Assembly: GCA_051294905.1 (NCBI GenBank)
Contig: CM119377.1
Location: 28,892,001 to 28,956,000, forward strand
DNA length: 64,000 nt
Source: Botryllus schlosseri
Lineage: Eukaryota
Reading direction: 5' to 3'
A program made the position numbers and the translations under genes. Of the stretch, positions 4,337 to 51,699 are shown one piece after another; within the stretch, counting starts at the first letter, position 1, and the number at the start of each line of letters is the position of its first letter. Below the pieces are notes generated by a model. It made no database searches and was not told the DNA's origin. It saw only the letters and a program-made list of their open reading frames with translations.

Positions 4337-4546
4337 GCTGATTGTGAAAAATTACAAGAATTTCCGGCGATTGAAGACGCGAAAAACGGGCAGATGCGGA
4401 GCTCAAAGACATGTGTGAAAAAATAAAGGCTCGGTTACACGATGAGTTGCCGCGAGGCATTCTTTGTTTATTACAAAGACTCCCTGTACCGCGCTCTGAC
4501 TCGCTGATTGTGAAAAATTACAAGAATTTCCGGCGATCGAAGACGC
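4337..4546 (+). repeat. Templated insertion (4381-4505, copy of 7761-7885) flanked by 44-bp direct repeats
   Basis: Direct repeats at 4337-4380 and 4503-4546 differ at one base. The intervening sequence aligns with 7761-7885 with about 8 differences. Confidence 0.9.
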
Positions 4547-29794: not shown

Positions 29795-32700
29795 TTAGCC
29801 TACCTAACGCATTGCGGATTTCACGCAAAAGCCGGTGTATCTGTATTAACGCTAACTGTGTTCCATACTGACATAGGTGATGAGATGATGATATCATGAA
29901 ACAGTTTACTAACATCCTCGGTTTGCATTCAAATATTTAGTTTTATTTTATATTCTCCAATGTCAATTTCACCGTGAAATTGTTGCCTTCAGGCCATTTG
30001 CTCACAATTACAACTTCTGTCAAGCGCGATAGCTGTTTCGTTTTCGATGGCGGCTAACAGCAGCTGGTCGCTTGATCAGCCTATTCCTTAGTAAATTTTA
30101 GGCAAAATTCGGTGTTGGTCTGTTCGTATTACTTTTGACAGTGTGCCATACCGAAAACGGCCATGATGAGGCTGCTTCTCCATGATGTCATGTAACAGTG
30201 TACCTAGAGTTCGGCTTTCATCCACGTATTTATTCGATAATATATTTTATGAAGGCGATTTTGCAGCAGAGATATAGACACTATAGACCGTAAGCCGTAC
30301 GTGTCGTGTGACAGTCTCCAGCCTCAAGGCCAAAATCTCCCAAGCTGTACCGGGACCGAATTTCCGAGGCTGCTATCCGTAGTTCTTCAGAATGATGTTT
30401 TGGATTCAATATGACATGTCCAATCTATGAGATAACAATTGCGTATGTGTCCGAACTCGATGACCTTTCCAGTTAGGCTTACGCAATCTCTCGAGTTATA
30501 GTCATTTCCATTTCGGCAGATAATTAGTCAGGTATAGCGCGAACATGAACCGTGTCGAATCTTTGTTCCGTACGCCGTTTACGCAGTTACCACACTTCAA
30601 GTCACAGCTCACCGGCAGACCTCTCGCAGCACATACGTTAAAATCACTGTTGTCGGGAAGTTCGTGTTACCGTACCACCAAGTCACTTGTTTACGTTGGA
30701 AAACGCCATTGTGACGTCATCTTGATAAAAAGTCGCTTGCAGCCCTTGCCCCACCACCGATATTGTCACGAGCCGCCACTGGTCTGTGTTGAAATAGATT
30801 GACAAACAAACATTAAAATAGAATGACAAACTAACTACCAACTTTCACCCAGTCACATTTCGAAATTACACATTGATTTGAAACAAGTAATGAAAGATTA
30901 CAACTCTATTCACGATTCCGTTTGTAAAATAGAGTTTCAGAAATACTATCACTATGACATTTCAACATTTTAACATCTTGCCATACGCAAAAGAGTAAAA
31001 TACAAAAAAACCTTGTCAAGTCAATCTGTTTGTAACTCACCCAACCAAGGCAAAAAGTGTCCATACGAAAAGTAGACAAGACTACGTGAGTAATCACTAC
31101 AACCCGTGAACATATCAAGCTCAGTTGTATCCATATTCCGTCTTTTTTATTCAACTGTAAGATGAAGTAATTACTACTTAGTGCGCGACTTGAAATTAAC
31201 ATATACTTCTAGTATACAAGCTTTGAATGTCTGACCAACATAGTTAAGAATTCATTTCTCACGATCGAACGCTGGTGTTGCATTGATAGATATCATGTTG
31301 TCAACATCCTTAGTAACACATTGGTTTGACATACGAGATTTTGTAATAGTCGATCATGACTTAATTATTAAATTACGACGTAATTGAACCGGTGTTGGTT
31401 AATGTGATATCAACAACATCAATTTGCAAAACCAGACTTGCATGTGTGAAATGTTCTTGATTGGGAAATTATTCCGGGTTGGTACAAAACAATCGTTGTA
31501 ACAGAAAATACTTTACAAATGCAATCGTTTACAATAATTAGGACTAAAGATGAAACAACAATATAGGTATTATTACGTTCAACAACCAGTACAATTATTA
31601 AAATCTATCGTTTGCGATAACTGGATAAACTGTTCGTTTAAAACAGATTTGATGAAACATTAGCTGCAGCAAACTGATTCGATTTAACTAGGAACATTAA
31701 CTGCAACACAAACTATTGAATCGAAAAAAAATCAGAAATGAACATCCAATGTGTAGACACCAAATGTGATGTGATCCAAGATCCATGTGTAGTAGGGTTG
31801 TCCATAATTTGGAAAATCTCAAAGAAGATGCGTATCCATGTCTCATTCTGTAGATTATTGATAAAAAAAAACATCAATAGCCTGCAATAAGCTCATAGGA
31901 AAGTCGTTAACATTTGTCTAAATGCGTTTGAAAGTAGCTGCCGTAGAGTGGGCGTGTTAGCGACCATAGAACGGCGAGAAGACTAGTAATCACGAAATCA
32001 CGTCTCTTGATTGGTTAATCAGCTATGCTTGAATGGTGACGATCACAGCGGCTTGCTGATTATGTGCTTATACTAGTTCAAGAAGTTCGCTAACGGCAAT
32101 GATTCTGTAAGCACATTGTACGTTGGTGATTTAATAATTAAATGAGACATCTGGTCATTGAATGTTTTAGTGTTAAAACTAGGTACCTATAGCTTTAGGG
32201 CAACAATAACCTATTGCAGGCATGACAGAGGTGAAACAGCGGTGAACTTATAGAAGTAAGTATAGATACCAGAAATAGCAAAAATATCTGATATGCGTGT
32301 GATTACACCAAGTGGTTCTGTTTTTCTGGGTGCAGGTAAGGTGTATTAGACATCGTCAAATTGGTGCAGCATACCATGTGATATGGATTCTTGACACAAT
32401 CCTGTATGCTCAGAAGATATGTGGGCCGACCAGATAGCTTACATTGGATTTCTGAAGTAGAGTGATACATTGGATTTCTGAAGAAGAGTGTAACTACCAC
32501 ACCGCTTCAATACTTCATTTTTATGTCCATGTCTCGTTGATTCAAGCATTAGTCGAGATACAGCCGGTAATGAATGATCTAAGATTCATTAAGGACAAGC
32601 TAAGCAATGCAAGAAAACTGTGTTTTGCTGTCTGTGCTCATTTTTAGACCTCTACGCGGCATCATTGAGGACTTTGACTCTAGATAACTAAGGTAAACCG

Positions 32701-33727
32701 GAGATGCGACACTAACGGGCGTCACGTGATTTCGCGCTCTGATGACTGTCTACGCAGCTCGAGTTGTTTTGCTGGGCATTTAAATAGGAATATCTATCCA
32801 TGAGGTTAGTTTAGCGAGTAGCTACTCCGTGTGGTTACTAACTAAGATTATTGGGTTGATGCTACGTAATCAAAGCTAGCAAAACGAGGAAATGAATGTC
32901 GTAATCATTGAATGAATGTGGCTGTTTCAAGTGGTCTGTGGTCTTCATTAAGCAATAGATCGTCCAAGATGACATGACATGAGATGACATACAAATGCCT
33001 GCATTTGATTTACATGTTTATGTTTTCATAGGATTTCATATGGCATTTATATGTTTGCATATGTTTTTTACAGCAAATTTAGTTACTGCGCTGTCAACTA
33101 TCAATTATATTATGCCAACGCACTGCGCCCTCCCTGACTGTAGCTGGTCTCGTTCCAGAAAAGAAAAGCGCAGTTTGTTTACTATTCATCGACCTGATTT
33201 GGCAAGAACTCCCGGCGAAAGAGCTCACCGGGAACAATTTACAAATTATATTTTATCTTTAAGAGATTACACCTGAGGAGATATTATTAAAGACATGTTG
33301 CACAAAGAAACGTAGTTCGTCTAGTTTACAAAAGTATGAGTGTCCGGTAACGTAAATTGGTAGCCAAACCATTTATGGTTAATCATGATCTCGTCGGCAC
33401 AGTTATGTAGTATGTGAAATGTGATATTGCAGGGCTGCCATTTGCGACCATGACTTTGCTCAAGATGATATCATCTGGACTGGTAAAAGATCGAAGCTTC
33501 GTCTTGGTGCTCTGCCGACTAAAAACATCTATAAGGGATCAAACTCCAGCTGCCTACCCCAGAGAAAAACACCGGAAGTTAGAAAAGCTCTTCCTCCGGC
33601 GAAAGTTTACTCCTCTTAGTCAAGTGTAAAAACCGCTGCTAAACATTTGATCGATAATTACAAAGGTAAAATTTCTAGTTGTTCAGCTGGAGTTAGTAAG
33701 CTCTGATAACTAATATAAGCTTATATG

Positions 33728-34052
33728 TGGGCTTACCATATTTTGGAAATCTAAAAGGGGGACACTTTTTCAGAAATCCTCGACTTTCAAAACCGAAGAA
33801 GAATTCTCAAAAACCGGTGACTTTATCCCACTTTCTGATCTGTTGACTAAAAAAAAAGGTCACCGTTTTTCTCTCCGCGTTGCTAGATGGTTGACTAAAA
33901 AAAGGGTCATCTTTCCGCTCTGAGCTCAAATCACCGTGTTTTTCACTCCGAAATACCGACCGGCCTTAAAAAGCGGGACGTTTGTCTGACTGGTCGGGAC
34001 GCCGGGACAAAGCGGGACTGTCCCGCCTAAAACGGGACGTATGGTAAAGCTA
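33728..34052. mobile_element. hAT-type MITE with CGGGAC subterminal repeats
   Basis: Imperfect TIR ending TTACCATA/TATGGTAA; perfect TSD CTTATATG. Confidence 0.85.
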
Positions 34053-34275
34053 CTTATATGCATTCGTAGAGTGCCGGCTCATAACCGAGGAGGATGAAAA
34101 TTTGATAATACAGAAAAGAAATGGAGTGTTTGATGATAGCATAGTACCCGAATTCAGGTTTGAATTACTATTAGGCTACATAGCCTAGTCTGAGATATTA
34201 GTGACATTACGAATTGACATGAATTTTGATCTTGAAAAATTGTGATAGGCAGCGATGTCACAATACAGGCTATTG

Positions 34276-35822
34276 CAGAGGTCTCAAACTCAAATGTGCT
34301 CGCGGGCCAATTTCCTAGTTTTGATGACGCCGCGGGCCGCAGCATCAATGATAGGGATATTTAATGGTCTTATTTGACGGGACCTGGCAGACAGGCATCC
34401 AACAAACGTGGAAATGCAATTTACTATTGTACTATTAACGCTTGACACGGAAAAATCACATTTTCAAATATTTGAATAAAAAGTTTTTTTGTGCCGGGCA
34501 GAATTGTTTTAATAACCGAGGTATAGACATCATGTGAGAAGATGCATCATGACATCGTAAAACTGTCGGGTTATCATATTGCAACTAGTGGACCTATGAC
34601 GAGCAACAACTTTACGTAGTCTATTTTAAAAGCTACTGATGATTGATCTGATATCAGAGCTTTTGAGCGGTGTAGCCTAATCCTATGGTTTTGATATCGT
34701 CGTGGTAAGTATAGGCTATATATTGTTACTGTCATTGCCAAACACAAATTAAATAAGCGTAAGATTTTGCCTTCGATATATCAATAACACCCTAAATACT
34801 ACACTCGTTGAGCCATAGTAATAGCAATGCTTCACAAACTTTTTAGTGATCGTGTACCCCTTGTGCTTCCAATAAGATTTCTAGTAGCCCCTGTCCATTT
34901 TCAACACAATTTCTGATGGTACCGTTCTAAATCAGAAAGCCCACTCACAAAATCGCGCGAAGTGTTGCTTCTAGTTGAATATATTAGCCAAAAAAATATT
35001 CCACAGCATATCGGTATACAAATTCTACAAAGCATCTCTTACTCCCTGATGTGGTGCTTCGTACCCCGATGGGGTCTACGGACCCCAGTTAAGAACCACT
35101 CGAATAGAAATGTCTAATCCACAAAGAATTCGTTGGTGTTACCGCTGTAGAGCTTACTACCACCTTATTCGGCACCCATAATAACATGGATCGGGGCCTA
35201 CGATATTCGAATATCGTAGGCCCCGCATGGATGAAGAGAAAAAACAACATGCATCATGTAATCAACTATATACGTCACGGGGGTAACAGTATGGTTGCCA
35301 CACTTACCAGATTAAATATATATATACCCTACGCAACGCAAGCTACGATCTTTTGCTATATATTACTATTCCCCATGAAAGTTACATAGATTGATGCGAT
35401 CGTAGGATTACCAAGTCACCATTCCGAGTCGCAAGTCCTCCGATTTCAGCGTTTTACCAGACTCAACTCGAGTCAATCCGAAATCAAGTAATTTTACGAG
35501 AAGGTCGTACCAAACCAAATCACAATTTTCTGTCGCGAATCATCAACGGGTCATGTTTTATCATCATGAACTAGAAATGCGACGTATAGCTGATCTTCTT
35601 CCGCACGGTAGCTTTTAAAAGTGATGTGATAGTGATGTTTGTTGGGATTTCGTTGATTTTTATAGCAGTTTTTGCGTGAAATTCAAGTTCTTATATCTTA
35701 AAAAGATATATGGCAGTTAAATATAATGTTGATTACTTGAAATTTCAAAATGCCGTCGCGGGCCGCACAAAATGCTCTGGTGGGCCGCATGCGGCCCGCG
35801 GGCCGCGTGTTTGAGACCTCTG
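34276..35822. mobile_element. Charlie/Buster-type non-autonomous hAT element
   Basis: TIR CAGAGGTCTCAAAC/GTTTGAGACCTCTG; TSD G(G/T)CTATTG; GCGGCCCGCGGGCCGC subterminal motif. Confidence 0.9.
34825..35101. mobile_element. Probable decayed MITE nested in the Charlie element
   Basis: Ends GTTAAGAACCACT, as in the 12601-14456 family; left TIR and TSD are only partial (AATAG). Confidence 0.5.
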
Positions 35823-38462
35823 GTCTATTGCATGCTATGGCTGGCAAGTGCAACCAGAAAATGTACAGCTCCTCAAATATCATTTTGCTCTCTGACATCA
35901 TTTTTAGGTAAGTAGATAGGGCCAGGGTTTATTATAGGGCCAGGGTTTATTATAGTGATTGGTACAACTGCAAAGTTTTCATTCAGGTGAACTGAACAGG
36001 ATTGCTGTATGCAAGGGCCTTGCAGGTAATATGGCGGGCTGCGAGATGCATGCAATTTTAAGTTGCGATGGGAGGAGATTAGTTGCCACGGATGTATTTA
36101 GATCACCAGGATGTCATATAATAGGCAAGTAGCACAATTACTTTCAGATGATTTTTTTTTATATATATAGGCCATCCCTAGCGTAATTTCAGTACATACA
36201 CCTGCAGGAAAAAGTTTTGAGGCAGATGGCATTTGCATGGCTTGCAGCAATTTTATGCCAATTGACACATTCCACAATGAAGAATTAGAAATTGAGGAGA
36301 TAGAATGTGACGAGGAGGTGGTATTGCTGCATCCAGATCAGCTTTATTTATAAATAATGAACAATTTCAGGAGTCAGTCAGTCAAGACAAATGGCAGAAA
36401 ATGTTTTCTTCTAATCAGTCGAGCAACAGATCAGCCCATAAAAATGCTCGTCGATACCCCACTAATGTAATTCAGTGGGCCGTGGAGCTTTTTTCCAGAT
36501 CACCCGCGGCATACAAGTTCGTTCAGGAAAGTGGTCTCTTGACATTGCCAACAGTAAGGACGATTCAACGTTTTCGGTAACCTTTATTCATTCCTATAAG
36601 TGCAAAATTTTTTACCTGATTATAATTGATAATGATAGGAATAAGATCAAGCCTACTCCTGGTCTCAATATGATTGCAGTCAAGGAAATTGAGCGTGATG
36701 GAAAACCATAAGGCTCTTCCGGCATATATTACTCTCGATGAAATAAAAAGTTAGCATCAAGTTTTGTATGAAGATATTATGCATAACAAATAATCCTTCC
36801 TTGTTCGTTGACAGTACGTGAAAATATAGTTGTGAAAGATGGCACGCTGATTGGCTTTGTTAACTCTCCCTTCAATAATAAAGCTGAAATTGCAACACAC
36901 ATTTTAGGTGAGAAGTGACTATTCCAAGCGGTTTCAACTTGTATTCATGGTTTCTTTTTCCAGTTTTCTATGTCCGCTCCATTTGGAAAGAAATTTCGCT
37001 ACCATTGGCATGGTATCCGACCCGGTCTCTTCCTCCTGGTGACCTTGCGGTATATTTCTGGGAGCTGCTATATGCATGCGAAACAAGGGGGTTGAATATC
37101 CATGCTGTGGTAGCAGATGGATTATCCATCAATCGAAGCTTTTTCAAACTGATTTCGGGAGAAAAGAAGATTCCACTGGATAAAGCGTTCACAGGACCGA
37201 ACATTAATGCCCCGGACAGGCTCATATACCTGTGCTATGATCCCCCGCATCTTCTCAAGGTGAGCATATTTTTTATGGGATAGTCTGAAACGTAAAATTT
37301 GTGACACTCTTATTTGCAGACTGCCAGGAATTCTTTGCTCTCGTCGAGGGGGATCAAGATACATGAATATTGATGGCAATGGCAAGGATATATTATGGAG
37401 TCATGTTTTAGACCTTTACAAAACTGAGTCTACCAGCCTTGTCCTGTACTAATCTGGACTAACTAGGGCACATGTAAAGTTGAATCCACGGTCAAAAGTA
37501 TGTGACCACTCAGTGTTGGATGAATTTCGTTTCGAGTGACCCATGTACCATATTTCGTTTGTAGATGAACGTAGCGCTGGCAATGGGTGTCCTATCTGAA
37601 AGAGTAGCTCAGGGTCTGAGGCAAATGGAGCATAATGGAACAGCTGATTTCATTTTGATGAAGTACCAGTATGATGAGTACACAAATTTATTGTGTTTTG
37701 TACTGTCAAAAGTAACTTGGATTTTTGACAGCTGGTTCCACATAGTAACATGCAGGGTCAACTATCCTATTTACAATATGGGGGATAGTAGGATAAGTGC
37801 CCTTCGTGAGTTTGCGGACAAACTCGAAAATTGGATAGTAAACTAAATACACTATACTACCTGTTGATTGCGATTCCAACGCCAATGTTTTTGTTACAGA
37901 AGGAGTCTGAAGCTCGTAAAGAGCCCAAAAGGATGATGGCCCTGCCAACAATGGAGGGTCTTTTATTTTCACCTCGCGTAGTTTGATTGGGCTGTGCGAG
38001 CAGTTGTTACGGCAGATGCCTCGTGTGGCTCTTGGCACATTCACCCAAGATGTTTTGGAAACGAAACGTTCTTCGGGAATTTGGTTTGATTGGTAGCCAA
38101 CTATGCAATAATATGTTAACAAAATCCTAATTTCTCAGAGGCAACGTGGCAGACGCTGTCAAAGTCAGGATATTGGCCCGGCTGCCTATGGCAATATTCA
38201 CCTTTCACAAAGCAAGGTGATTAAACTTTCGGCTATCTTCAACAACAACAAAAAAGCGAAGTTCTCGAAACGGTAGTCATATCTTGTTTGTTTTTTTATT
38301 CGTACCTCATATGAACAATTGAGCAATACAATGCGATTTACAAATATATCTTCTGTCCAATTTTATCCATTCTTGTAAAAGTTTGCGCTTGAGTGTTCAA
38401 GATAGGAAGGTGTCGTCATAACTTGTAGCAATCTTTTCATCAGCAACCCACTTCGTCTAAAG

Positions 38463-38889
38463 CAGTGGTTCCCAAAGCGGGCGATATCGCCACCTAGGAG
38501 GCGATTGCCAGGGTTGTAACCAAGCCAATTTCACTAACAGTTTTGCATCAAGTCGAAAAATTTCAAGTGACTGTTTAGTTTCGAGTTAAGAGTCTTGTCC
38601 ACTTTTTATAACTCTGTTTGGTGACATCGAATGATTCGCAAACATTGATTTTCCTCACTTTCAGCAGCTTCTGGTAGCAAGTACCAAAAAGCGTGATTTG
38701 ATTACTTAAATTACAATGTAATGTAATGTCGGTCTTGGCCGTCTGAGTCTCGAGTCATATGACAAATTTCAGTCAACTCGAGTCATTACAACCCCGGCGA
38801 TGGCGCGTTAAAACGGCTATATTGGAGTCAAGTCGGAGAAATGACCTGACCTGAGTCTGAGAAATGACGAAAAAGGTTGGGAACCACTG
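38463..38889. mobile_element. CAGTGGTTCCCAA-family MITE containing a CAGGGTTGTAA-family MITE (38509-38796)
   Basis: Outer TSD GTCTA(A/G)AG; inner TSD GCGAT(T/G)GC. Confidence 0.88.
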
Positions 38890-39948
38890 GTCTAGAGCAT
38901 GTAGCCTGTATGGGAACCACTGGTCTAGAGCATGTAGCCTGTATAAGAGGCATGAACAGAACACCGAAAGAATAGTAAGCAGACAATTCGAAACTGACAA
39001 ATCAATGAAGTGGCATGCGTCAGTAGGCCCGAGAATCTATAGTGCTAGCTACTATTTCTTGATTGGAACTAATTGCATTTCGACTTGAAATGTTGGGACT
39101 CATTGAAAGAAGTGGGACTCATTGAAAGAAGTAGTACGATAGGCACAGTCTTATATTGCAAGGAAGTGCTACAACGTAAAACAAAATCTAGTCGGCATCT
39201 TTTGAAAGGAACAGTAGGCACAGTATCATGTTGCAAGGAAAGTGATACAAAGTCAATAAAATTATCTTGTCGTCAACTCAAAATGTAGAGATTGACCAAG
39301 TGTTTAACTTTGTAATGGAAATTTGTGAGAGAGATGCTACCTTCTCATCACCTATTGCGATAGCTGACTGCGGAGTGAAACTGCTCAGGTGGTCACTTTA
39401 TCGTGCAGACGTTTAAACAGTCTCTTTGCGAAGCTGTGTGAAAAAACCGGATCATCAATGACGTTACGTAAGTGACGAGCTGTCTTATATCCAACTCAGA
39501 TGCATCCTCAACACACAGGTCGTAAACCCTATGAATGAAAGATTCATAGTACTGACCACTGAAAATGGCGATTTTGGCATTTTCGAAATTGATGAAAGAT
39601 GGGTGACGGTTGGCTTCTTTACGGAATGTCAGATAAACATGTTCACATAAAACATATACTCTTCTGTAGGATACATTAAACACCCAGCCTTCCTTTCTAT
39701 AAATGAAATAAAGGAGCCACGCGGTTGGTCGTTGCAAAGCAGCTTCACAATGTCGAAACGAAAGCGCTCACGTCCATAGGAGGTCCTCGTGCCTTGTTCA
39801 AAGCAATGATATATATACAATGATTGGAAACTACTGTGAGCTCTGCGTTTCAGCGTGTTCCTGGTCACGCTTCATCGCATACACAGTTGTGCTGTAAACA
39901 ATGGCTTCCTCAGCAATACTTCCATGAGGAACTAGCAATGATATATAA

Positions 39949-42900
39949 TAGGGTGGAGTGAAAATGACTTTTTTTTTTCAAATCAAAAAAGGCCTTCCTC
40001 AATCCTGACAAATGACCTAAAACTTCAATTAAAAGTGACTTCAGGGTGTTGCCCCCATTTTCCAGCCGGCAACCCCCCAATTTCTGCGCGTGGGGGGGTA
40101 AAATGGCCCATCTCGGCAACCGCTGGTCGTAGAGTCATGATTAGGGCCATTTTTATATGACCTTAAAAAATCAATTATATGACTTTATTTTTGGGAAAAT
40201 ATGACTTTATATGACTTTATGCGAAAATCGTGTATTTTTACATGTAACCAACGTCACTCATGGAACTGACGAGTAAAACATGAACAACATAACAGTAATA
40301 CACATCCATTTTTATTTTAAACCACTTTTGTAGTACAGTTTCATGTAGTGTGGAATGTTGGAGTCTTCAAAGTTACGATTTGGACGTAAAAATGACTTTA
40401 GTAAGGAAAATGAGCGCTCCACAGACGCTGATGTTGGTTGACACTTCTGCAGTTTGGCATACAGCGCTGGTGAAATGTCTTGTCTTTGTAGCTCCATAAT
40501 TTGTTTCACGTCGGTTTTGTCCAATCGCTTCTTAATGTAATTTTTGAGCTCAAGATGATCTTTTCCGAAATCGAGGGCATTTAGATCAGCATGAGCCTCT
40601 TTGATAGTGTACGCACAACTTTCCATTTTCAGTATCAAGTTTGAAATATTGTTGTAGTGGAGGCATATTTCTGTTAACTGACTCGTCAAATTTGGATCGT
40701 TCACTGAATCTTTGACGCTCTTTACAATAACTCCTTCAGCTTCCCGTGCGCTGACTATTTCTTTCACTTGTGGAAGTCTCTGAACTTCAAATGACGTCCC
40801 ACTTCAGTGCACAGAAGTGAAACAGATTGTGTAGAAAACAATGCAATGTGTGACCTCATAGGTCTGCGACTGTAATGTTATGTAGGCTAACCTTACAGTT
40901 TGCCTTCGTTCAATCAGAAATTGCCTTACGGTACTTTCTTAGTGCGTAATTGCTTCAATTGGCACTTTTTATTTAAAGTATTCAACAATATGACTTTATA
41001 ACTCAAATATGACCTAACCAGGAGAATATGACTTTATATGACTTTATAACTTTCTTGATATACCCTGTATGGATGCGGTTTTTGCGTTAAAATTGATTTC
41101 ACGACTTACTGATGCATAGAAAAAAATATGACTTTAAATGGCCCTAGTCATGATATATAGCTCAAAATCTGCGGAAGCATCATGTTTCTATCTGTCTTCT
41201 GAAGAAAGTTTTCTCTATTGTGAACACAAAATGAGTTATAGCCAAAAAACTATATATACGCACATTTTTGTTGAAATTCAGCATTTATTCTGACGAATTG
41301 TGATCTGTCATTAGTTTTTTTTTAAAGTAAAGTAACACAGTGGCAATGCCGAATATTGGGCCCATATTACAAATATATTCACAACACAGTCCTTTTAAAA
41401 ATCGGTTCAAAACATCATAATGAAAGACTCACATTTAACGACTTTTATTAAAAATGCATTCTTTTGTAAAGTTTTTTCATCAGTTTACGAGACTTAATTT
41501 TTCGGCGAATGAGGCCATCTCGTCTTTGAAATCCCGAAACTATTGCTGATGCTTCTGTTACGAGCTTTACATGTCGTTCCACTGTTTGATTGTGGCATGG
41601 ATGAAACAAAATCAGAGGCTTCTCGCGGCATTCTTCTAACTCTGTATCAGTTAAGTGCTCAATCGTTGGAGGAAGTTGTTGATAAGGTTCAATATCAACC
41701 AATTCGTGGTATGCGTTGGCTTTGGGACACAGAATAAACGAATAGAACCCCAGTTCAATTGGTTGGAACTGCTATGACTTTCAATGTCCACAAGTGAATT
41801 TTATTCAGCGGCATGTTTTCGAAACGCAAGCACCTTGGTCACACCCTTATTTCGTATGTCTTCATTATCATCTACCAGCATTGCAATCATAATATTTTCG
41901 GGGTGTGCGGAATAACCGTTTCTTATCACCACATTCGGAGCAATTTTTCGAACGTTTCGGTCAGAGAAATTCAAAACCTGTTTAATCAAGTTGAAGATGT
42001 TTCTGGGTCCATGTGTTATATGTTTGTTTCCCTTGATCTCAAACCAAGTTGGAAAATATACTTCAAGGCAAAAACGAACCAGAATCTCCAGGTTTAAAGG
42101 TTGTTCATTAACTGTTACATAATACCGTAAAACTCTGCACTGCATCCTAAAGTTAGCCATCTTGAATGCGCAACCGGTGGTCCAACCTCCAAGTAAGCCA
42201 GATCATCATCAGCATTTCCTTGAATAATTGCCCAGCACATTTATAAGCATATAACTGGTCCTTACTTAAGTCACTAACAATTTCCTATGGGAGCTTTTGA
42301 AAGGCCATAAGTGGTGGCGAGAGCTTTTTGAATTGAGTAACTGGCCAACAAGATACACTTCCACGTAGTTTTTTTTCAATTGGGTGTGACCAAGGTGCTG
42401 GCGATTCGAAAACATGCCGCTGAATAAAATTCACTCCTGGACATTGAGAGTCATAGCGGTTCAAACCAATTGAACTGCGGTCCTGTTCGTTTATTCTGCG
42501 TCTCAAAGTTGAACTTGGAAGCAAAGGTATACGACGAGTTGGTTGATATTGAACCTTATATCAACAACTTTCTCAAGCGATTGAGCACTTAACTGATGCA
42601 GAGTTAGAAGAATGCCGCGAGAAGCCTCTGATTTTGTTTCATCCATGCCGCAATCAAACAGTGCATGGAACATCATGTAAAGCTCGTAACAGAAGCATCA
42701 GGGCACGTTTCGGGATTTCAAAGACGCGATGGCCTCATTCGCCGAAAAATTAAGTCTCGTAAACTGATGAAAAAACTTGACAAAAGAATGCATTTTTAAT
42801 ATAAGACGTTCAATGTGAATGTTTCATTATGATGTTTTGAACCGATTTTAAAAGGACTGTGTTGTGAATATATTTGTAATATGGGCCCAATATTCGGTAT

Positions 42901-43283
42901 TGCCAGTGTGTTACTTTACTTTGAAAAAAACTAATGGCAGATCACAATTCGTCAGAATAAATGCTGAATTTCAACAAAAATGTGCGTATATATAGTTTTT
43001 TGGCTATAACTCATTTTGCGTTCACAATAGAGAAAACTTTCCTCAGAAGACAGATAGAAACATGATGCTTCCGCAGATTTTGAGCTATATATCATGACTC
43101 TACGACCAGCGGTTGCCGAGATGGGCCATTTTACCCCCCCACGCGCAGAAATTGGGGGGTTGCCGGCTGGAAAATGGGGGCAACACCCTGAAGTCACTTT
43201 TAATTGAAGTTTTAGGTCATTTGTCAGGATTGAGGAAGGCCTTTTTTGATTTGAAAAAAAAAAGTCATTTTCACTCCACCCTA
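39949..43283. mobile_element. Foldback hATm-like derivative made of two inverted 3' ends
   Basis: Arms 39949-41846 and 42382-43283; termini TAGGGTGGAGTG; flanks ATATATAA on both sides. Transposase C-terminus HPCHNQTVERHVKLVTEAS...RDGLIR occurs on both arms; RNGYSAHPENIMIAML lies in the spacer. Confidence 0.88.
40142..41146 (-). mobile_element. Internally deleted hAT element
   Basis: TIR TAGGGCCATTT; perfect TSD GTCATGAT; C-terminal remnant QPTSASVERSFSLLK (ORF 40312-40767); ATATGACTTT subterminal repeats. Confidence 0.93.
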
Positions 43284-45685
43284 ATATATAATTCATTGGG
43301 TATATTTACCAGTTGCGATTAGCGTTAACGTGTTGAATAGCTTTAAAAGCGCATTTCTTTCGCGCGTCTGGGATTTTTTTCTGATTATGCTAGCGGACCG
43401 CTGCCATATAAACGTTGATTCACGTACACGTACTTCGTACAGTCGTACACCTAGTTCACAAGATAAATTTCTCGCGTATCGCAAATCCAATTCACACATT
43501 GACGACTCGCAATTCGCAACCCCGTGATGAAGCCTTGTGACGACCAACGAGGCTTATGTTCACACAGTCGCGGACGTTCAACCATTGTTGCAAGTGACAC
43601 AACCTGCATTCCAACTTGAGGTGTCGCTTTTCCATCATATTGCTAAATCAATAACATCATATATAATTAAATATCAAGCAGACGTAGTTTTTAAAGAAGT
43701 AATTCTATCATTTTGAGTACTCGAGTAGGTTTGCCTACTTTCTTGACTGATTGTGTTTTCACACTACTCACCAATCAAAACCATCACAACTTGGTTTTTG
43801 CCAGGGATATCTAGATATCCATGGGTTTTGAAAATAGCACCCACATATTCAATGGTCATTTTGCGGTAGTCACTAAGCTTCACCCTGCAATTTCAAAAGT
43901 GACTATTTCCAACTGACTCCGAGCAAACAACGAAATCTAATGTTAGAACTTTTTAAAATTTATATTTTCGCTACTTCTATTTGAACCTGAGTAAATCATT
44001 GTAGCAATACTTCCACTACTTCAGTAGCAACGCTGCATACATCACCCACCTCTGAAAAAAGTCCCCATCCATGATCATTCCACAAAACCTTGATGCCTTA
44101 CAATACAGAATTGAATTTTCAGGATTCCATCATGTTATGTAAAGAAATTAGGAATGATGAAACAAGATACATACACTTCACAGATGGAACATTACGAATA
44201 CATAATTTAATCCTTAAATCCCTAATTTAATGATGCATGCATTTGAAAAAAGTAACATTAATATGCAACTGTACAGAACTAGATCGATGAATTGATAACC
44301 ATGTGGACAACAAAAACAGTTTATGCGTGATTTTTTAGGCAATAACAGTGCTAGATATCAATTTTTGTCATCCTCAACTTGGGAAAAGTATTTGGATGAT
44401 GTCCTTCAAAATTGCAGCAGTACACTCGCTTGGCTCAAAAATGGCCAATTACGACCCGAATGATGCCATATCCACTCTTGATGAAATCTGCCTTGTTTAG
44501 ATGTTTGTCCAGTCCATCTTTGCTTGCTCTCGCCCGAATCATTGGTAGGATGGGGAACAACTGTAGTGCAGAATATGGATTCGGCTATTTGACCGTACCT
44601 GCCCAGGGTTATTAAATGCAATATGGCTTCAAGTCGGCGTTGTAGCTGAACTCGGTTGATGTATTCATAATGTCGAACCACTTGTAAATACCGGCAAACC
44701 ATGCAGAAGCTTCTGTAGCCTCACCTCTCCTCGCTCGCATAATACGCGCAACACTATTGGACCGAAGCTGGGCAACAAAAATCTCCCGCATCTTTGCCAA
44801 GCTTTGCATACGAAAACGTGCATCCGTCAATTTGCAGCATCTCAATTCCGTCGGTTCAAACAGCCGTAAAATGTCGCCATCGAATAAATTTACCATCCTT
44901 GTTGAGAATTTCCGTACCACCAGTACGACTGGCGTAGAGGTTGTTGCGTACGGTTTTTAACAAATAGGGAGGGTCGAAAATCAAAAATATCTCATGCTGG
45001 GGGTTGAACATATTTTTGCATTTGTAAGGATACATATTTTTGCATTTGTAAGGATACTCTTTGTAAGGCTACTCTAAGTTCAATATTCAGCTCTTGGAAC
45101 ATCTTGCGATTTGCACTGAGTCCATCAGCAACAAACGCAGCTACCCGAAATCCACAATCCTCCAAGATGCCGACACACTTACAGAATATATTCGAAAGTT
45201 GAAATGAAGCCACCGACTTTGTTACGTAGTATGTCAAGGGTTTGGAAACAGACGTTACCAGGCCACTGGCATAAACTTGAGGAGCATGTGTAGCTGGTTC
45301 ATCATCATCTACAGGTGTCGACTCCCCAAGAAAAATGAATCCTACCATTCCGTCTTTCGTTGTACTGAATACAATATTCTCTTTCACTGAAACTGCAAAA
45401 AATCAGAAGTAGTTAGACACATGAAACATCACAGTGAACAGCATTGCTGAAATATTCGCGATGAAGTCTTCGACACAGCTATAAAGTCATGAGAACACAA
45501 TATAGCCAATCTACAGGCAAATTTAAGGTTGGAATTGCTCCAATTTTCAAATTGATCGATTTGTGTCCTGTCCGCAAGAGAAAATGCATTAGAAATTAAA
45601 ACGAAACTCGTTTTGTCAGTTTTACCAGTCAACTACCATGGGAATCAAAATAGCGCAGAGGTTTTAGCACACCCTGGTATGCAAC

Positions 45686-47984
45686 CAGTGATGAGCACCG
45701 GAGCGGAGTCGGAGTGGAGTCGGAGCGGAGTTTTGCCAATTTTGTGATACCCGGAGTGGAGTCGGAGTTTACAACAGATATTTTTCCGGAGTTTTACGGA
45801 GTATTGTTAGTTTTGCCCCCGATATCTTTCGATAGCTTTGACCAGAAGACACTATTGATTACAAACCAAAACACAGACAGTTGACACCTTGTAAAGTTGT
45901 AATATGACCGGTAACATGCAAAAATGATTGACAAGTGCATAAAAATCAGCCATCTGGACTGCAATTGGGGACTGGAGAGTAACCTAGTGATCTAGCAAGG
46001 CATATCCGCTGAGCAGTGTCTGTAGTTCACAAACTTGAAGACACCCAATATCGTTCGCAGCGCATCATTTTCTCCCTGCAATGAGATGCAGTCTTTGAAT
46101 CCACTGCTGAATGTCACCATATTATGAGATAAGATCTCCAGAATCTTCCACGTTGCTGTCATTGCAGTCTTCTATAGTCACATCATATTCCTCCTTGCGT
46201 ATTTGTTTCGTGACTAATTTTCATGCTACCCCAGTAATTGTGCGAAACATTTACAATCAGCAACATACAGCGGGGCTTTCCTATGGTACAGCCTTTAGCT
46301 ACCCTGATTCTTCCAGCAAGTTGATGATCATAACGGAATATATCCCATTATCCTGATGACATTCAATATAGTAATAGGTCCATTTTGTGAAAATGTATTC
46401 CCAACGTTGGTATCAGTTGCAACAAGATAATATCCGATACCACTTTTGTGATAACTTTTCGCAACTTTCATCGTACTTGCAATTTGCAGTGAGAGATATC
46501 GATAATAAGTGTTACATCAATATTACCTTTATATCTGTGAGAAATATACATACAACAAGCAAGTATCTGGATGGAAACAATAATAACTTATGCAATGTGT
46601 TACATGATTTAATGACATTGCGACGAATTTTCGCTAGTAAGATCCGCTCACAGAGGCATACCAGCATCTAAGCCCGCTTTAAAGATTTCAACAATACATA
46701 AATCACTAAGGTAAGCTGATCTTACCCTGTAAAAACAGAATATTCCGAATTTCTGAACAGCCACACTAAATAACTACAACCGTCTGCTTTGCTCTGCTCG
46801 CATCAACTCAACTACGCTTCCTTCAATATTGATTGACGTAGTCAGTCATCCAGAACTCTTCTGAATTTTCGTCATGTAATGTTTGGTTTGATTGAGAAAT
46901 GACTTTGATGTGATATGAAAAATCAGCACCGCAATCAAGTTTCTGCTGCTGGTCTGTCACAGACTCCAAATTCCAGATATCATGTATCAGCTTCAAAATT
47001 GGAAGTCACTAGTCAACTTCAAGGAGCGTCGATCGGTGCGTCAGTGATGCATCATGTATGTTTAGTACAGTGCAGTTCCATCAACTGTTTCATGGCGATG
47101 CGGAACTTAATTTACTGAAACCCGTGATGTGATCATCGATTTCAGTGGTGTTAGTGGTAGTTAGTTCGAACTGACTGGTCTTCCTTCGTCGTTTTAATAT
47201 AATGGCTGAAGCACCGTCGACGTCAAGTGGGTTACTCACTAAGACGCAGAAAAAAAATGACGTGTGGAAGGATTTCACTCTGATGCTGCATGATAATAAC
47301 GGCCAGTATACTGGGTTTGCGAGATGTCAAAATTGCAATGTTCAGCTAAAGCATCACAAGTTGACAAGTGGTACGTCGCATCTTCGAAGACATATCGAAG
47401 CTTGTAAGAAGAATTGATCGCAGTTGAAATGCAAGTAAGCGAGTAATCAAAGGAGAAGGTGATCATGGGGAACACTGATCGCCGGGTGGAGAATACCGAA
47501 GAAGTGCCGGTATGCCGTGGTGTTGTGCAGAAGACGTTTTGCTATCCAGATTTACGGTGAAACGTAAGTTCGATGAGGAGGCTTCATCTTTGAAGCAGAA
47601 GCTGTCAGAGGAACTAAGAGTTGCTATTAAGTGTTATGGGCTGGCTGGCATCACCACAGATATGTGGACCGATCTAAAGGGTCGCAGTTCTATTAGCTTG
47701 ACTGTCCATTTTGTTGGAGAGAACTTGACTCTCAGAAGTAATGTTGCGACTGTTCGGCAATTCACGGATACTAAAAAATCTGGTATGAATATCAGACAGG
47801 CTATCGAAAACATCGATTGGGATTCTTCGACAATGGTCTGAATATATTTCGGGGACTGGACAAGATTCTTCGGGTTATCTCGGAGTCTGGGATTGAGATC
47901 CCCGGAGTCGGAGGGACTTTGCCTCAGAGACCAAAGTTGTCGGAGGGACTCGGAGTCTCGAAAAGCAGTCTCCGCTCATCACTG
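45686..47984 (+). mobile_element. Internally deleted hAT element with BED finger
   Basis: TIR CAGTGATGAGC/GCTCATCACTG; perfect TSD TATGCAAC; BED finger VWKDF...CQNC...GTSHLRRH (47202-47417); ITTDMWTD...SLTVHF (47512-47841). Confidence 0.93.
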
Positions 47985-48723
47985 TATGCAACACTATCTC
48001 CCCATTCTGACGCAGCCAACTATTCATCAATAAACTATTAGTGAGAAAAAAGAGTTATAAATATTATAATAGTTTTCAATAAAATTGCTTTCTGTTAAAT
48101 GGGTCTCATCGAATTTTAAGGTTGGCCACCCACCAGCAAAGCAATAAGATTACTCACACAAGCATCTTAATCAGTTTCGCTTTCAAGATATCAGATGGCG
48201 TAATTGATGCTTACCAATGTTCGGATCTCAATCTGTCTTAATTTTCCAAGCTTTTTTACGCTCATCCACAGATGCAAAAACCTAGGCAGCTAGTCAGTAC
48301 CTGAATATTGCGCATTGGCAGAAGTTTGATCAGACCTTAGTATGCAGTACTGTCTCACTATGCTCGCAAAACCTATTAACAATCTACCAACAAACGAAAA
48401 AACAGTGAAATATCTGCCAGCAAAGGTGATAGCAGTACTCCAGCACGGTCAACATTACTCAAGTAAGTGTACGCAGTCAACCTTATCCGCGCACACGCTG
48501 ATTTCGGCGGAAGTAAACCTTACAGCGTTAGGGGGCGTGGCAGTTTCCAATCATTGTATATATATCATTGGTTCAAAGTGTACCCAGCAATGTACTCAAG
48601 AGTTTCACTCTCAAATTGCTGAATTGAACCACCTTTAGTTTCATCTTCTTTGACCGAACCCTTCATTATCATTAATTTCATTGCGTCTAGAAGAAACTTT
48701 GACGCCTCAATCCTAGATGTATT

Positions 48724-50227
48724 GGCACTTCTTCGATAGTAGGTAGACATCGAAAAGTGTTCACCATGATCACCAATGAATGTTTTCCATGAACACGAAC
48801 AAAAATTTATAAACGTCAAAATATATTGTTTTTGCGTTTGGAGAGGGTTAGGGGCAAAGTTGGGTTTAGGGTATCCCAAGATTAGGGTTGGAGTATTTGG
48901 GTGGGAGGGGGGATATTAGGGTTACAGGAGGGGAATATCAGGGTTGCGGAAGGGGGGATATTAGGGTTGGGGTTAGGGGGATATTAGGGTTGCGGGAGGG
49001 AGATATTAGGGTTGTGGGAGGGGGATATTGGGGTTGTGGGAGGGGGGATATTAGGGTTGCGGGAGGGGGGACATTAAAGTTACGGGAGGGGATATTAGGG
49101 TTGTGGGAGGGGGGATATTAGGGTTGGGGTTAGGGGGTAGTGCGGAGCGGATCGACCAATTCTCTGGTCCGGTTCCGATCCGGTTGTTCAATTCTCTGGT
49201 CCGGCTCCGGCCGTATCAGGAAAAGTACTGATCCGGCTCCAATCCGGTCCGGCCAGAAATCCGGCCCTACTCGGTACGGAGGTTCCGTGAATTGATAAAT
49301 ATGCCTCGTTTATGTTCACACTGTATTGGAGGTTACTTACGTGTGGTTGGTTGGTAGTTATATAGTTATAAAAGTCATGCTTATCCATAAAGATTCTGGC
49401 CGGATCAAAAAAGTAGTGATCCGGCTCCGGCCGTAACAGAAAAAGTACTGATCCGGCTCCGATCCGGCCAAAATTGTAAACATCCGGCCGGATATCCAAT
49501 CCGGCTCCGGTCCATGCTCCGCACTATTAGGGTTGGAGTTAGGGGGATATTAGGGTTGGAGGTGGGTTAGGTTCAACGTTGGGGTTAGATTACCCCTAAC
49601 CGGGGTTTAACCCACCTTCAATCTCCCTTTCACCCAACCCTAATATCCCCTCTCCCACAGCCCCTAATATACCCTAACCCCAACATCCCCCTCCCACAAC
49701 CCTAATATCCCCCCTCCCGCAACCCTAATACCCCCCTCCCGCAACCCTAATATCCCCCTAACCCCAATATCTCCCTCCCACAACCCTAATATCTCCCTAA
49801 CCGCAATATCCCCCTCCCACTACCCTAATATCTCCCTCCCGCAACCCTAATATCCCCCTAACCCCAACCCTAATATCCTCGCTCCCACAACCCTAATATC
49901 CCCCCTCCCGCAACCCTAATATCCCCCTTCCTAATCTTGGGATACCTAACCCCAACTTTGACCCTAACCCACCTCCAATCCCCCTTTCCTCAAACCTTAT
50001 TATCCCTCTTTCCCAAACCCTAATATCCCCCTCCCATAACCCTAATATCCCTCTTTCCCCGATCCTAATACCCCCCTCCAACCCGACCCTAATATCCGTC
50101 TCTCCAAAGACACAAAAAACAACAATTCATTTTGACGTTTATGAATTTTTATTCGTGTTCATGGGAAACATTTATTGGTGATCATGGTGAACACTTTTCG
50201 ATGTCTACCTACTATCGAAGAAGTGCC
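48724..50227. mobile_element. Merlin-like foldback MITE with TTAGGG-containing arrays
   Basis: TIRs start GGCACTTCTTCGATAGTAGGTAGACATCGAAAAGTG (over 120 bp unique); perfect TSD GATGTATT; G-rich array of about 22-bp units on the left arm and its complement on the right. Superfamily inferred only from GG termini plus the 8-bp TSD. Confidence 0.8.
49138..49526. mobile_element. hAT-type MITE with CCGG-rich repeats
   Basis: TIR TAGTGCGGAGC/GCTCCGCACTA; flanks TTAGGGGG and TTAGGGTT. Confidence 0.82.
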
Positions 50228-51699
50228 GATGTATTTTCATTGAAGTAGTCCTGTGCGTGAACTTTTTCAGTTGGATAATGCCGTATCACAGTTGCTGATT
50301 CTGGTTTCGATACAAATTCGCGCCAAAATCCATCAATCTTCTGCTTTCCAAATTCAGAAAGTGAAGTGCACTACTGACTTGCTGAATGAAGTCAGCCGGC
50401 AGACTAGAATCGGAAAGGATGGCTCTCGTGCGTTTCCCAATTTTGCTAGCTGGTGCCTCATTTCCTCCACCGTCCTCCATGTCATTGTACAACAGATCTT
50501 GGATCCCATCGTCAGTCAGAAGTGATTCCCAATCAAATTCGCCTACATCAGCCATGTCCGAAAATTTACAACGATACCCACAATTATTCGAATCCCTGTA
50601 GAGAGTATATTGTATAACAACAATTCTCATGTATTCATGTACCGTATAGCCATATTTAATGCTTTAAAATTGTATTCACTTGCCCATCTCTCTAGCACTG
50701 ATTATGTAGCATCAATCGAATAACCTTGGTTAGTAACCACACGGAGTAGCTACTCGCTTAACTAACCTCATGGATAGGTATTTCTATTCAAATGCAGAAA
50801 TTAACATCCTCTTCCACAAGCTCCCAGTAAAACAAATCGAGCGGCGTAGACAGTCATCAGAGCGTGACGCCCGGCAGTGTCGCATCTACGGTTCAACTTG
50901 GTTATCTATACTTTGACAGCACTTGCGGGTATGATTCATTATGCTGTAATAATATGACAAGTGCCAAGCATAAATGACAGATTCATCCAGCCCTTACAGC
51001 ATTCAAGACTTCAATTATATACCACGACAACAGCCTAATAAGATCAGACAAAGTAGTGTCAATGTCAAGCTTTCTATTTGTATTCAATGATGGTACATCC
51101 CCTCGTTCGTTTGCCACTTGCATAAGCGCCTTTGCAATATTTTTCCGCTTGATTTTGTGCTTTCCATCAATGAAATCAAGGCATACAGACTACAACGGTT
51201 ACCTTCACAACAAGCCATCATGTCATGTATTTAAAGATGTTGTGGAGCAGCTGTTATTTGTTCATCATGTGTTTCGTTACTCAAAATGTTCCGAATTAAT
51301 CCTAAATCATGTTTGGCGGACCAAACTACAATGCGCTTACAGAATCACCGCCGTAAGCCGATTCCGTGACCAACAAGCCGCCAATGTCGTGATCAATGAT
51401 TCAATCAAACGCCGTGATTTCGTGATTACTAGTCTGCTTGCCGTTCTATGGTCGCTGACTCGCCCACTCTACGGCAGCTACTTTCAAACGCATTTAGACA
51501 AATGTTAGCGACTCTCCCGTGAGCTTCTTGCAGGTTCGTTGACGTTTCTCAACTATAATCTATAGAATGAGACATGGATACGCATAAATTTTGAGATTTT
51601 CCAAATTATGGACAACCGTAATGTGTAGACACCAAATTACTGTTATTGATGCTGTAACAAAATAAGCTTTGATAATACTTGACGTATGTGGTCTCCTGG

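What the first reader, a model, noticed from the sequence alone, without database searches (positions are those of the whole stretch)
32679..50909. Two-gene P-superfamily transposon with long TIRs and convergent genes (MuDR-like architecture)
Seen: TIRs of about 200 bp and an 8-bp flank duplication. A spliced THAP/P transposase starts about 240 bp inside the left TIR (+), and a second gene starts about 145 bp inside the right TIR (-). The second gene is invisible in the ORF track because two later insertions split it; removing them via their exact TSDs (GATGTATT, GTTCAAAG) rejoins it in frame to about 300 aa. Stripping all nested inserts leaves an element of about 5.6 kb. Established: canonical P elements have short TIRs and a single transposase gene, while long TIRs driving two convergent genes is the maize MuDR layout. 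Inference: this is a distinct P lineage with an accessory protein and TIR-borne promoters. I cannot tell whether repeat libraries already hold it.
Basis: partly seen in the sequence, partly recalled or inferred. Interest (0 to 1): 0.8.

Follow-up and report, generated by a model that had tools for sequence, protein, structure and literature searches.

The report
P transposon with split transposase
This is a dead, insertion-riddled copy of a real jumping-gene family in which the P-element transposase is split into two genes on opposite strands, the second encoding what is normally the enzyme's tail domain; I found no report of this layout for P elements.

Summary
Window 32679-50910 is one P-superfamily DNA transposon with ~220-bp TIRs. 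Its target-site duplication is CTTTGAC, 7 bp in all six copies checked, not 8. Four later insertions swell it. An uninterrupted 5,990-bp copy elsewhere (L001) is collinear with the stripped window copy.

L001 carries an intact 15-exon, 766-aa THAP/RNase H transposase on one strand. On the other strand it carries an intact, apparently intronless ORF2 (307-332 aa).

The two-gene convergent layout recurs in subfamilies whose ORF2 has diverged to 26% identity, and in two foreign contigs. ORF2 is under purifying selection (dN/dS 0.10-0.14). RNA data show spliced transposase transcripts and cover ORF2.

ORF2 is a free-standing homolog of the P-transposase C-terminal domain (CTD). Its model fits the Drosophila CTD in 6p5a with Z 10.6, against 5.5 for the next hit. 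18 of 44 family members match Pfam Tnp_P_element_C. The transposase gene stops just after the RNase H domain in every lineage, so it has no CTD.

Best reading: a naturally split transposase. That ORF2 is required in trans is inferred, not shown.

The window copy itself is a pseudogene in both genes. MuDR resembles it only in layout. I rate it a new variant of a known kind.

The parts
32672..32678 (.). Left target-site duplication, CTTTGAC
   Evidence: A 7-bp TSD is found in 6 of 6 copies checked. In this copy the match extends to 8 bp (32671-32678) only because the base after the right terminus can be read either way.
32679..32897 (+). Left TIR (~220 bp). Its terminus is TCTAGATAAC, one mismatch from the family terminus TATAGATAAC.
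33112..38276 (+). Transposase pseudogene (THAP, HTH, RNase H with GTP-binding insertion, no CTD). 15 exons mapped from L001: 33112-33311, 33433-33665, 34070-34157, 34238-34277 plus 35823-35907, 35987-36124, 36208-36317, 36371-36576, 36639-36749, 36815-36907, 36964-37259, 37320-37497, 37565-37668, 37733-37835, 37900-38083, 38139-38276. Broken by in-exon stops, frameshifts and insert 2.
33728..34052 (.). Nested insert 1 (325 bp, TSD CTTATATG), inside transposase intron 2
34278..35822 (.). Nested insert 2 (1,545 bp, TIR GAGGTCTCAAAC...), inside transposase exon 4
38277..39351 (.). Spacer between the two convergent stop codons. It contains a MITE-like repeat with CAGTGGTTCCCAA-type ends, also present in L001 at 4387-4804.
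39352..39803 (-). ORF2 pseudogene, 3' piece (about aa 184-332), with frameshifts and one stop
39804..48570 (.). Nested insert 3 (8,767 bp, composite; TSD GTTCAAAG; 29-bp TIR CAATGATATATATAC...). Splits ORF2.
48571..48723 (-). ORF2 pseudogene, middle piece (about aa 133-186). 48571-48578 is the second copy of TSD GTTCAAAG.
48724..50227 (.). Nested insert 4 (1,504 bp; TSD GATGTATT; TIR GGCACTTCTTCGATAG...; internal G-rich 22-23-bp tandem arrays in inverted orientation). Splits ORF2.
50228..50555 (-). ORF2 pseudogene, 5' piece. The conserved start (MADVGEF) is at 50555-50553. An upstream in-frame ATG lies at 50630.
50674..50910 (-). Right TIR (~235 bp)
50911..50917 (.). Right target-site duplication, CTTTGAC

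Best explanation
The interval is a decayed copy of an autonomous P-superfamily DNA transposon lineage whose transposase is naturally split into two convergent genes.

Gene 1 (+ strand) has 15 short exons and encodes 766 aa in the intact copy L001. It covers the THAP DNA-binding domain, the HTH, and the RNase H catalytic domain with its GTP-binding insertion. It stops about 30-50 residues after the RNase H C-terminal motif, in a basic tail that could be a nuclear localisation signal.

Gene 2 (ORF2, - strand) appears intronless and encodes ~307 aa. It has a conserved acidic N-terminal peptide followed by an all-helical domain homologous to the P-transposase C-terminal domain (CTD).

Shown here: the architecture, its conservation, the intact copies, purifying selection, transcription and splicing, the CTD homology, and the absence of a cis CTD.

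[quoted passage not shown] If so, transposition needs both genes to be expressed. Gene 1's product alone would resemble the CTD-less 66-kDa Drosophila repressor. Each gene is probably transcribed from the adjacent TIR.
For: Family and layout
- An intact 5,990-bp copy exists, and copies share both ends with 7-bp TSDs.
- The convergent transposase/ORF2 pair is found in L010, L011, L012, L013, L014, L015 and L020.
- It is also found in foreign contigs L021 and L022.
- TIRs enclose both genes in L010 and L011.

ORF2 is a real gene
- Full-length open frames without stops occur at six loci of this subfamily and two of a 78%-identical one.
- dN/dS is 0.137, 0.099 and 0.137 between subfamily pairs.
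- There are 95 representative clusters of mostly stand-alone ~300-aa relatives.

ORF2 is a CTD homolog
- The best PDB hit is 6p5a_B (Foldseek probability 0.99).
- VIA-align gives Z 10.3 and 10.6, rmsd 2.6 and 2.3 A, over 114 of 118 residues (Drosophila residues 617-734). The next hit scores 5.5-6.2.
- The top two Swiss-Prot AlphaFold hits are human THAP9 [633-853] and the Drosophila P transposase [501-748].
- 18 of 44 family members hit PF12596 (best E 1e-5) and 2 hit PF22824 THAP9_C.
- Sub-threshold PF12596 hits in this genome fall on ORF2 loci.
- hhalign against cis CTDs of canonical P transposases from the same genome gives E 0.002.

The transposase lacks a CTD
- Its residues 323-738 align to canonical residues 71-502, ending at the RNase H C-terminal part. 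ORF2 aligns to canonical residues 573-693.
- The last exon stops 30-50 aa after the RQxGRRxxNPD motif in 9 copies, including both foreign contigs. In L022 the two stop codons are only ~40 bp apart.

RNA
- GT..AG joints support 10 of the 14 introns. One 1,275-nt unspliced contig covers ORF2.
- The gene model projects onto L010 with conserved splice sites and reading frame.

Literature (PMC7776569)
- The CTD is all-helical and tethered by a disordered linker.
- It packs against another subunit and contacts transposon and target DNA.
- The Drosophila protein lacking the C-terminal third is inactive and acts as a repressor.
Against: - No interaction or activity data exist. The requirement in trans is an inference.
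- This element's own ORF2 does not reach any Pfam threshold. hhalign probability is only 13% with thin alignments. The homology case rests mainly on predicted structure and on transitive profile hits.
- Introns 3-6 of the transposase have no RNA joints, and RNA contigs from two runs retain introns 5-6. The full-length 766-aa product is therefore not proven to be made.
- No transcription start was mapped.
- Deletion derivatives that keep an intact ORF2 (L002, L003) fit a regulator role as well as a subunit role.
- I could not check Repbase or Dfam, so the family may already be catalogued there.
Confidence: 0.6

Rival explanations
1. ORF2 is a CTD-derived regulator rather than an essential subunit. 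It would be a decoy or inhibitor that titrates the transposase or its DNA ends, while the CTD-less transposase is active on its own.
For: Internal-deletion copies lose the transposase core but keep ORF2 intact (L002, L003) and are transcribed (joint 1079>3726). This recalls repressor-producing P derivatives. ORF2 also has a conserved acidic N-terminal peptide not known from cis CTDs.
Against: In Drosophila the protein lacking the C-terminal third cannot catalyse transposition (PMC7776569). All lineages with a stand-alone ORF2 examined here have a transposase without a CTD, which is what complementation predicts. Strong purifying selection on ORF2 has accompanied the transposase over deep divergence.
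Confidence: 0.22
2. ORF2 is an accessory protein of unrelated function, analogous to MURB or to the Harbinger Myb-like protein. Its likeness to the CTD would be a generic helical-bundle resemblance.
For: ORF2 of this element has no Pfam hit. Helical folds give middling Z scores by chance (note). hhalign probability is low.
Against: The CTD match stands 4-5 Z units above the next hit and covers 114 of 118 residues of the solved domain. Only P and THAP9 transposases score with high probability in Swiss-Prot. 18 of 44 relatives hit PF12596 by sequence. The LEYIAGY and YPS motifs align with canonical cis CTDs of the same genome.
Confidence: 0.1
3. ORF2 is a captured host gene or an independent insertion, or the two TIRs come from unrelated elements.
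For: None was found. The window copy on its own is too broken to exclude this.
Against: The same ends and the same ORF2 recur in ten or more copies with TSDs. The synteny is conserved across subfamilies and in other organisms. There is no TIR or TSD around ORF2.
Confidence: 0.02

Closest known systems
Drosophila P element / THAP9 transposases (canonical P superfamily)
   Same: Both have a THAP N-terminus, an HTH, and a split RNase H with a GTP-binding insertion. Both have many short introns, as I recall was reported for Ciona P elements (not re-read here). The TSD is 7-8 bp. The CTD fold is present in the system.
   Different: Here the CTD is not part of the transposase polypeptide. It is a separate gene, apparently intronless, on the opposite strand at the other end of the element. 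The TIRs are 220-640 bp rather than 31 bp. Canonical single-ORF P transposases with a cis CTD coexist in the same genome (L023-L026).
Drosophila 66-kDa P repressor (IVS3 retention product)
   Same: It is a P transposase without its C-terminal third. Activity is controlled by whether the CTD is supplied (PMC7776569).
   Different: In Drosophila the CTD is added by splicing one exon in cis. Here it would be added as a second protein. Whether gene 1's product represses is untested.
Galileo / 1360 (P superfamily with long TIRs)
   Same: Long TIRs in a P-type element (Galileo, PMC3688188). I also recall a 7-bp TSD for Galileo and 1360; I did not re-read that here.
   Different: No second gene is described in the Galileo papers my searches returned, which I screened by title and abstract only.
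Maize MuDR (Mutator)
   Same: TIRs of about 200 bp flank two convergent genes, each starting next to a TIR. One is the transposase and the other a helper.
   Different: MuDR has a different transposase superfamily and a 9-bp TSD (my knowledge, not tested here). ORF2 is a piece of the transposase fold, which I do not believe is true of MURB (not tested). The likeness is in layout, not membership.
PIF/Harbinger (transposase plus Myb-like protein)
   Same: A two-protein eukaryotic cut-and-paste system.
   Different: To my knowledge the Harbinger partner is an unrelated DNA-binding protein that the transposase needs, not a detached domain of the transposase itself.

Membership tests
P superfamily transposon (transposase gene) | RNase H catalytic domain of TNP/THAP9 type (PF21787, PF21789) with the DDE triad | tested here: met
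   PF21787 scores 25.4 bits against a 24.6 cut-off on one exon. The spliced protein's residues 323-738 align to canonical residues 71-502, E 2e-21. DEM, ADG and QDVLE motifs are present.
P superfamily transposon (transposase gene) | GTP-binding insertion domain inside RNase H | tested here: inconclusive
   The alignment to canonical L023p runs through its GBD, residues 279-400. No exon piece alone reaches PF21788, and GTP-contact residues were not checked.
P superfamily transposon (transposase gene) | N-terminal THAP zinc finger (C2CH plus an AVPT-like motif) | tested here: inconclusive
   The spliced protein has C5-x4-C10 ... C70-x2-H73 and GALPTK. The domain is split by intron 1, so no Pfam hit was obtained on the pieces. 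The C-to-C spacing is slightly longer than I recall as typical.
P superfamily transposon (transposase gene) | C-terminal domain (PF12596 / THAP9_C) in the same polypeptide | tested here: not met
   The last exon ends 30-50 aa after the RNase H C-terminal motif in 9 copies. No downstream GT..AG joints are seen. There is no room for a CTD in L022.
P superfamily transposon (element) | 7-8 bp target-site duplication and terminal inverted repeats | tested here: met
   7-bp TSDs in 6 of 6 copies. TIRs are 220 bp here, 405 bp in L011 and ~470-640 bp in L010.
Tnp_P_element_C / THAP9_C domain (ORF2) | Profile match above the Pfam gathering score | tested here: not met
   ORF2 of this element has no hit at E<=0.1. 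18 of 44 relatives match PF12596 at E<=0.05 (best 1e-5) and 2 match PF22824. One locus reaches 23.5 bits.
Tnp_P_element_C / THAP9_C domain (ORF2) | Fold of the solved Drosophila P-transposase CTD | tested here: met
   Model residues 141-293 against 6p5a_B 617-734: Z 10.6, rmsd 2.3 A, 114 of 118 residues aligned, next hit 5.5. The model's mean pLDDT is 80.8.
Mutator / MuDR | MULE (MURA-type) transposase and 9-11 bp TSD | tested here: not met
   The transposase is P-type and the TSD is 7 bp. Only the two-convergent-gene, long-TIR layout is shared.

The most novel reading that the evidence does not exclude
The CTD works as a detachable licensing subunit. Transposition would occur only where both TIR-driven genes are expressed together. 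The CTD-less transposase alone would bind the ends and repress, like the 66-kDa Drosophila protein. The convergent genes, with stop codons as close as ~40 bp in L022, would give overlapping antisense RNA that feeds small-RNA self-silencing. On this reading the lineage solved with gene architecture the same regulatory problem that Drosophila P solved with IVS3 splicing. It would also be a natural two-component P transposase usable as a split genetic tool.
Probability: 0.3. Interest if true: 0.8.

Novelty: new variant of a known kind. Interest (0 to 1): 0.66.

Why it matters
P elements are a textbook single-gene transposon, and the job of the transposase's C-terminal domain is known only from one cryo-EM structure. 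A lineage that encodes this domain as a separate, selected and transcribed gene gives three things:
- a natural experiment on what the domain does and whether it can act in trans;
- a parallel to the splicing switch (IVS3) that controls P activity in flies;
- a further class of two-protein eukaryotic cut-and-paste transposons, in which the partner is a detached piece of the enzyme itself.

Some AlphaFold DB look-alikes are labelled 'uncharacterized' or 'THAP9'. Finally, it suggests a ready-made split transposase system for genetics.

Tried and rejected
- Pfam on ORF2 and on the exon pieces gave only PF21787 on one exon.
- A PDB sequence search with the ORF2 profile found nothing significant.
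- The word-indexed protein search found only 2 relatives. Cluster look-ups gave no names or taxa.
- The ESM Atlas feature search returned only bacterial noise below the recognition threshold.
- The PDB search with single transposase exons was uninformative. One call failed on reading frame. The other gave a non-significant match at a consistent position, 6p5a_A residues 488-536, E 0.94.
- Three further context look-ups (P0097, P0034, P0047) gave contigs too short, or without DNA, to show neighbours.
- Literature searches for a two-gene or split P element found none. This is absence in the open-access library only. Repbase and Dfam could not be searched.
- Complex prediction was not run. The transposase is spliced and cannot be given as an unaltered reference, and typing it in was not appropriate.
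- A captured host gene or an independent insertion as the source of ORF2 was rejected.
- Membership of MuDR was rejected.
- The hAT-like appearance of ORFs inside insert 3 was not confirmed by Pfam.
Full report

The window lies at C7:28892001-28956000 of a 495-Mb eukaryotic assembly. An earlier scan note calls the organism an ascidian; I did not check that.

The two ends of 32679-50909 are inverted repeats. Arms 32776-32897 and 50674-50795 are 85% complementary. The outer ~97 bp also match, with one indel. That gives TIRs of about 220 bp.

Searching each end against the whole genome finds ten or more loci where a left end and a right end face each other 2.9-14.5 kb apart. One of them, L001 (C8:25263915-25269904, 5,990 bp), is uninterrupted. 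It aligns to the window in five collinear pieces: 32681-33727, 34053-34277, 35823-39803, 48571-48723 and 50228-50909. This defines four later insertions of 325, 1,545, 8,767 and 1,504 bp.

The junctions overlap by 8-10 bp, which are the target duplications of the inserts.

The element's own flank duplication reads ACTTTGAC in this copy. Five other copies all show perfect 7-bp duplications next to the terminus TATAGATAAC. The family TSD is therefore 7 bp (CTTTGAC here) and the element ends at 50910.

**2. The two genes**

L001 has an intact 332-aa ORF on the minus strand at 5213-6211. It is 307 aa when counted from the conserved start MADVGEF.

On the plus strand, RNA data give GT..AG joints for ten introns. 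These data are raw RNA-seq reads of run X24 and assembled contigs of runs X1 and X2. Four more introns were inferred from splice consensus and from comparison with a 75%-identical sister copy.

The resulting 15-exon model translates without a stop into 766 aa. Projected onto L010, it keeps AG/GT at the 13 boundaries that could be projected, including an unusual GC donor. Exon lengths differ by multiples of three, and the frame stays open through exon 12.

The protein begins with a THAP-type C2CH pattern. One exon hits PF21787 above the Pfam cut-off. Residues 323-738 align to residues 71-502 of canonical single-ORF P transposases found elsewhere in the same genome, E 2e-21. In those canonical proteins Pfam sees HTH, RNase H-N, GBD, RNase H-C and a weak CTD.

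An unspliced 1,275-nt RNA contig covers ORF2 from 6 nt beyond its stop to 4 nt from the element's end. RNA-seq reads also cover it.

The window copy is dead in both genes. The transposase exons carry stops and indels, and insert 2 breaks exon 4. After the two inserts are removed in silico, ORF2 still has at least four frameshifts and a stop.

**3. Is ORF2 part of the element?**

Yes.
- Full-length open ORF2 frames without stops occur at six loci of this subfamily and two of a 78%-identical subfamily.
- The same convergent pair, transposase on one strand and ORF2 on the other, recurs in L010 (78% ORF2 identity), L011 (46%), L012 (42%), and L013, L014, L015 and L020 (26-28%).
- In L011 and L010 long TIRs (405 bp; ~470-640 bp) enclose both genes.
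- Two contigs from unrelated ENA assemblies show the same layout (L021, L022).
- dN/dS for ORF2 between subfamily pairs is 0.137, 0.099 and 0.137.
- A full HMMER scan of 1.8 billion representative proteins finds 95 clusters. Almost all are stand-alone proteins of ~280-330 aa, and many sit on ~1.2-1.7-kb contigs of sequencing-run assemblies, which is mRNA size.

**4. What is ORF2?**

It has no Pfam hit of its own. Four independent lines nonetheless identify it as a homolog of the P-transposase C-terminal domain.

(a) Structure. A first AlphaFold model (pLDDT 64) has 6p5a_B as its best PDB hit, Foldseek probability 0.99. That chain is the CTD of the Drosophila P transposase strand-transfer complex. 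VIA-align gives Z 10.3. A second model built on 44 sequences (pLDDT 80.8) gives Z 10.6, rmsd 2.3 A, with 114 of 118 CTD residues aligned (Drosophila 617-734 to ORF2 141-293). The next hit scores 5.5. In Swiss-Prot AlphaFold models, only human THAP9 [633-853] and the Drosophila P transposase [501-748] score with high probability. AFDB clusters add several THAP9 and P C-termini.

(b) Transitive sequence evidence. 18 of 44 members of the extended family hit PF12596 Tnp_P_element_C (best E 1e-5). Two hit PF22824 THAP9_C.

(c) Sub-threshold PF12596 matches in this genome fall on ORF2 loci at the LEYIAGY motif. One of them reaches 23.5 bits.

(d) Direct comparison with the cis CTDs of canonical P transposases from the same genome gives hhalign E 0.002 (27% identity over 106 columns). 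BLASTP aligns ORF2 167-282 to canonical 573-693, E 0.005 against the two-sequence set.

**5. The transposase has no CTD of its own**

The alignment to canonical proteins stops at the end of the RNase H-C part. In nine copies, covering all subfamilies and both foreign contigs, the last exon runs only 30-50 residues past the RQxGRRxxNPD motif. It ends in a lysine/arginine-rich tail.

No canonical splice joint is seen downstream of the last intron. In L022 the two stop codons are about 40 bp apart, which leaves no room for a cis CTD.

The two genes therefore map onto complementary parts of a canonical P transposase.

**6. Mechanism**

The review PMC7776569 describes the CTD as follows:
- It is entirely helical and tethered to RNase H by a flexible, disordered linker.
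- It makes numerous contacts with transposon and target DNA.

A domain that already acts across subunits on a floppy tether is the kind that could tolerate being encoded separately. I therefore favour a split enzyme in which ORF2 supplies the CTD in trans (about 0.6). The main rival is a CTD-derived regulator (about 0.2). Nothing here measures binding or activity.

TIR promoters are implied by geometry. In L010 the ORF2 start codon is 16 bp from the inner edge of the TIR. In L011 the TIR contains the transposase start codon, and a copy of it lies upstream of ORF2. The read data flagged no sharp transcript starts.

**7. Comparison with known systems, and novelty**

The element meets the P-superfamily tests for catalytic core and TSD/TIR type. 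It fails one test: the CTD is not in cis. The GBD and THAP tests are inconclusive by profile, though alignment and motif inspection point the right way.

MuDR shares only the layout: ~200-bp TIRs and two convergent genes. The transposase family differs, and the 7-bp TSD here differs from the 9 bp I recall for MuDR.

My literature searches found no P element described with a second gene or a detached CTD. Repbase and Dfam were not searchable.

A sister first-stage note on the same stretch (s1-249716) had already guessed the CTD likeness. I reached it independently and tested it here.

I rate this a new variant of a known kind, with interest about 0.66.

Noticed in passing
window 44868-45393 (-), inside insert 3: A second, different P-type transposase fragment. 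It hits PF21787 at E 3e-15 and is 32-45% identical to the host element's transposase. One P-like element is therefore nested, within a composite insert, inside another.
   Followed up: partly
window 39942-43290: A foldback-like structure inside insert 3. It has 200-nt arms that are 100% complementary (39942-40141 / 43091-43290), plus nested arms of 85-188 nt at 91-98% around a ~0.5-kb centre. By eye, ORFs here and at 47202-47841 look hAT-like (BED-type finger, SVERSFS motif), but Pfam gave no hit.
   Followed up: partly
window 48891-49157 and 49608-50108 (insert 4): Two arrays of a G-rich 22-23-bp unit (GGGGGATATTAGGGTTG.GGGAG, containing TTAGGG-like cores) lie in inverted orientation inside a 1.5-kb TIR element.
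   Followed up: no
L001:1894-2686 (RNA contigs of runs X1 and X2): The contigs keep inferred introns 5 and 6 (2061-2142, 2253-2305) while the same molecule has the downstream intron spliced out. This is either regulated intron retention giving a truncated THAP-only protein, reminiscent of P-element IVS3 and KP repressors, or pre-mRNA.
   Followed up: partly
L002, L003, L004, L005 (C10:27179384, C3:31826760, C13:7029400, C6:6381022): Internal-deletion derivatives of 2.9-3.65 kb lose the transposase core but keep the ORF2 end. ORF2 is fully open in L002 and L003. Four RNA reads carry the L004/L005-type deletion joint (1079>3726).
   Followed up: partly
L017, L018 and about 15 similar loci (for example C11:14698740-14701923): A ~3.0-3.3-kb related family (TIRs 70-75% identical) carries degenerate ORF2 5' fragments in inverted orientation at both ends. 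These look like two-right-end or foldback-type derivatives.
   Followed up: no
L023-L026 (for example C10:4426290-4428515): Canonical intronless single-ORF P transposases of 704-786 aa coexist with the split lineage in the same genome. They have HTH, RNase H-N, GBD, RNase H-C and a cis CTD. Several have open frames of 792-799 aa.
   Followed up: partly
L001:4387-4804; window about 38878-38943: A MITE-like repeat with CAGTGGTTCCCAA-type TIRs sits in the spacer between the two genes. It is extremely abundant in RNA contigs, with summed depth up to ~6,400. In the window it carries a perfect 33-bp tandem duplication.
   Followed up: no
L011:1231-1636 / 6356-6760: In this subfamily the 405-bp TIR includes the transposase start codon and its first ~15 codons. 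A copy of the THAP start therefore lies upstream of ORF2 on the other arm.
   Followed up: no
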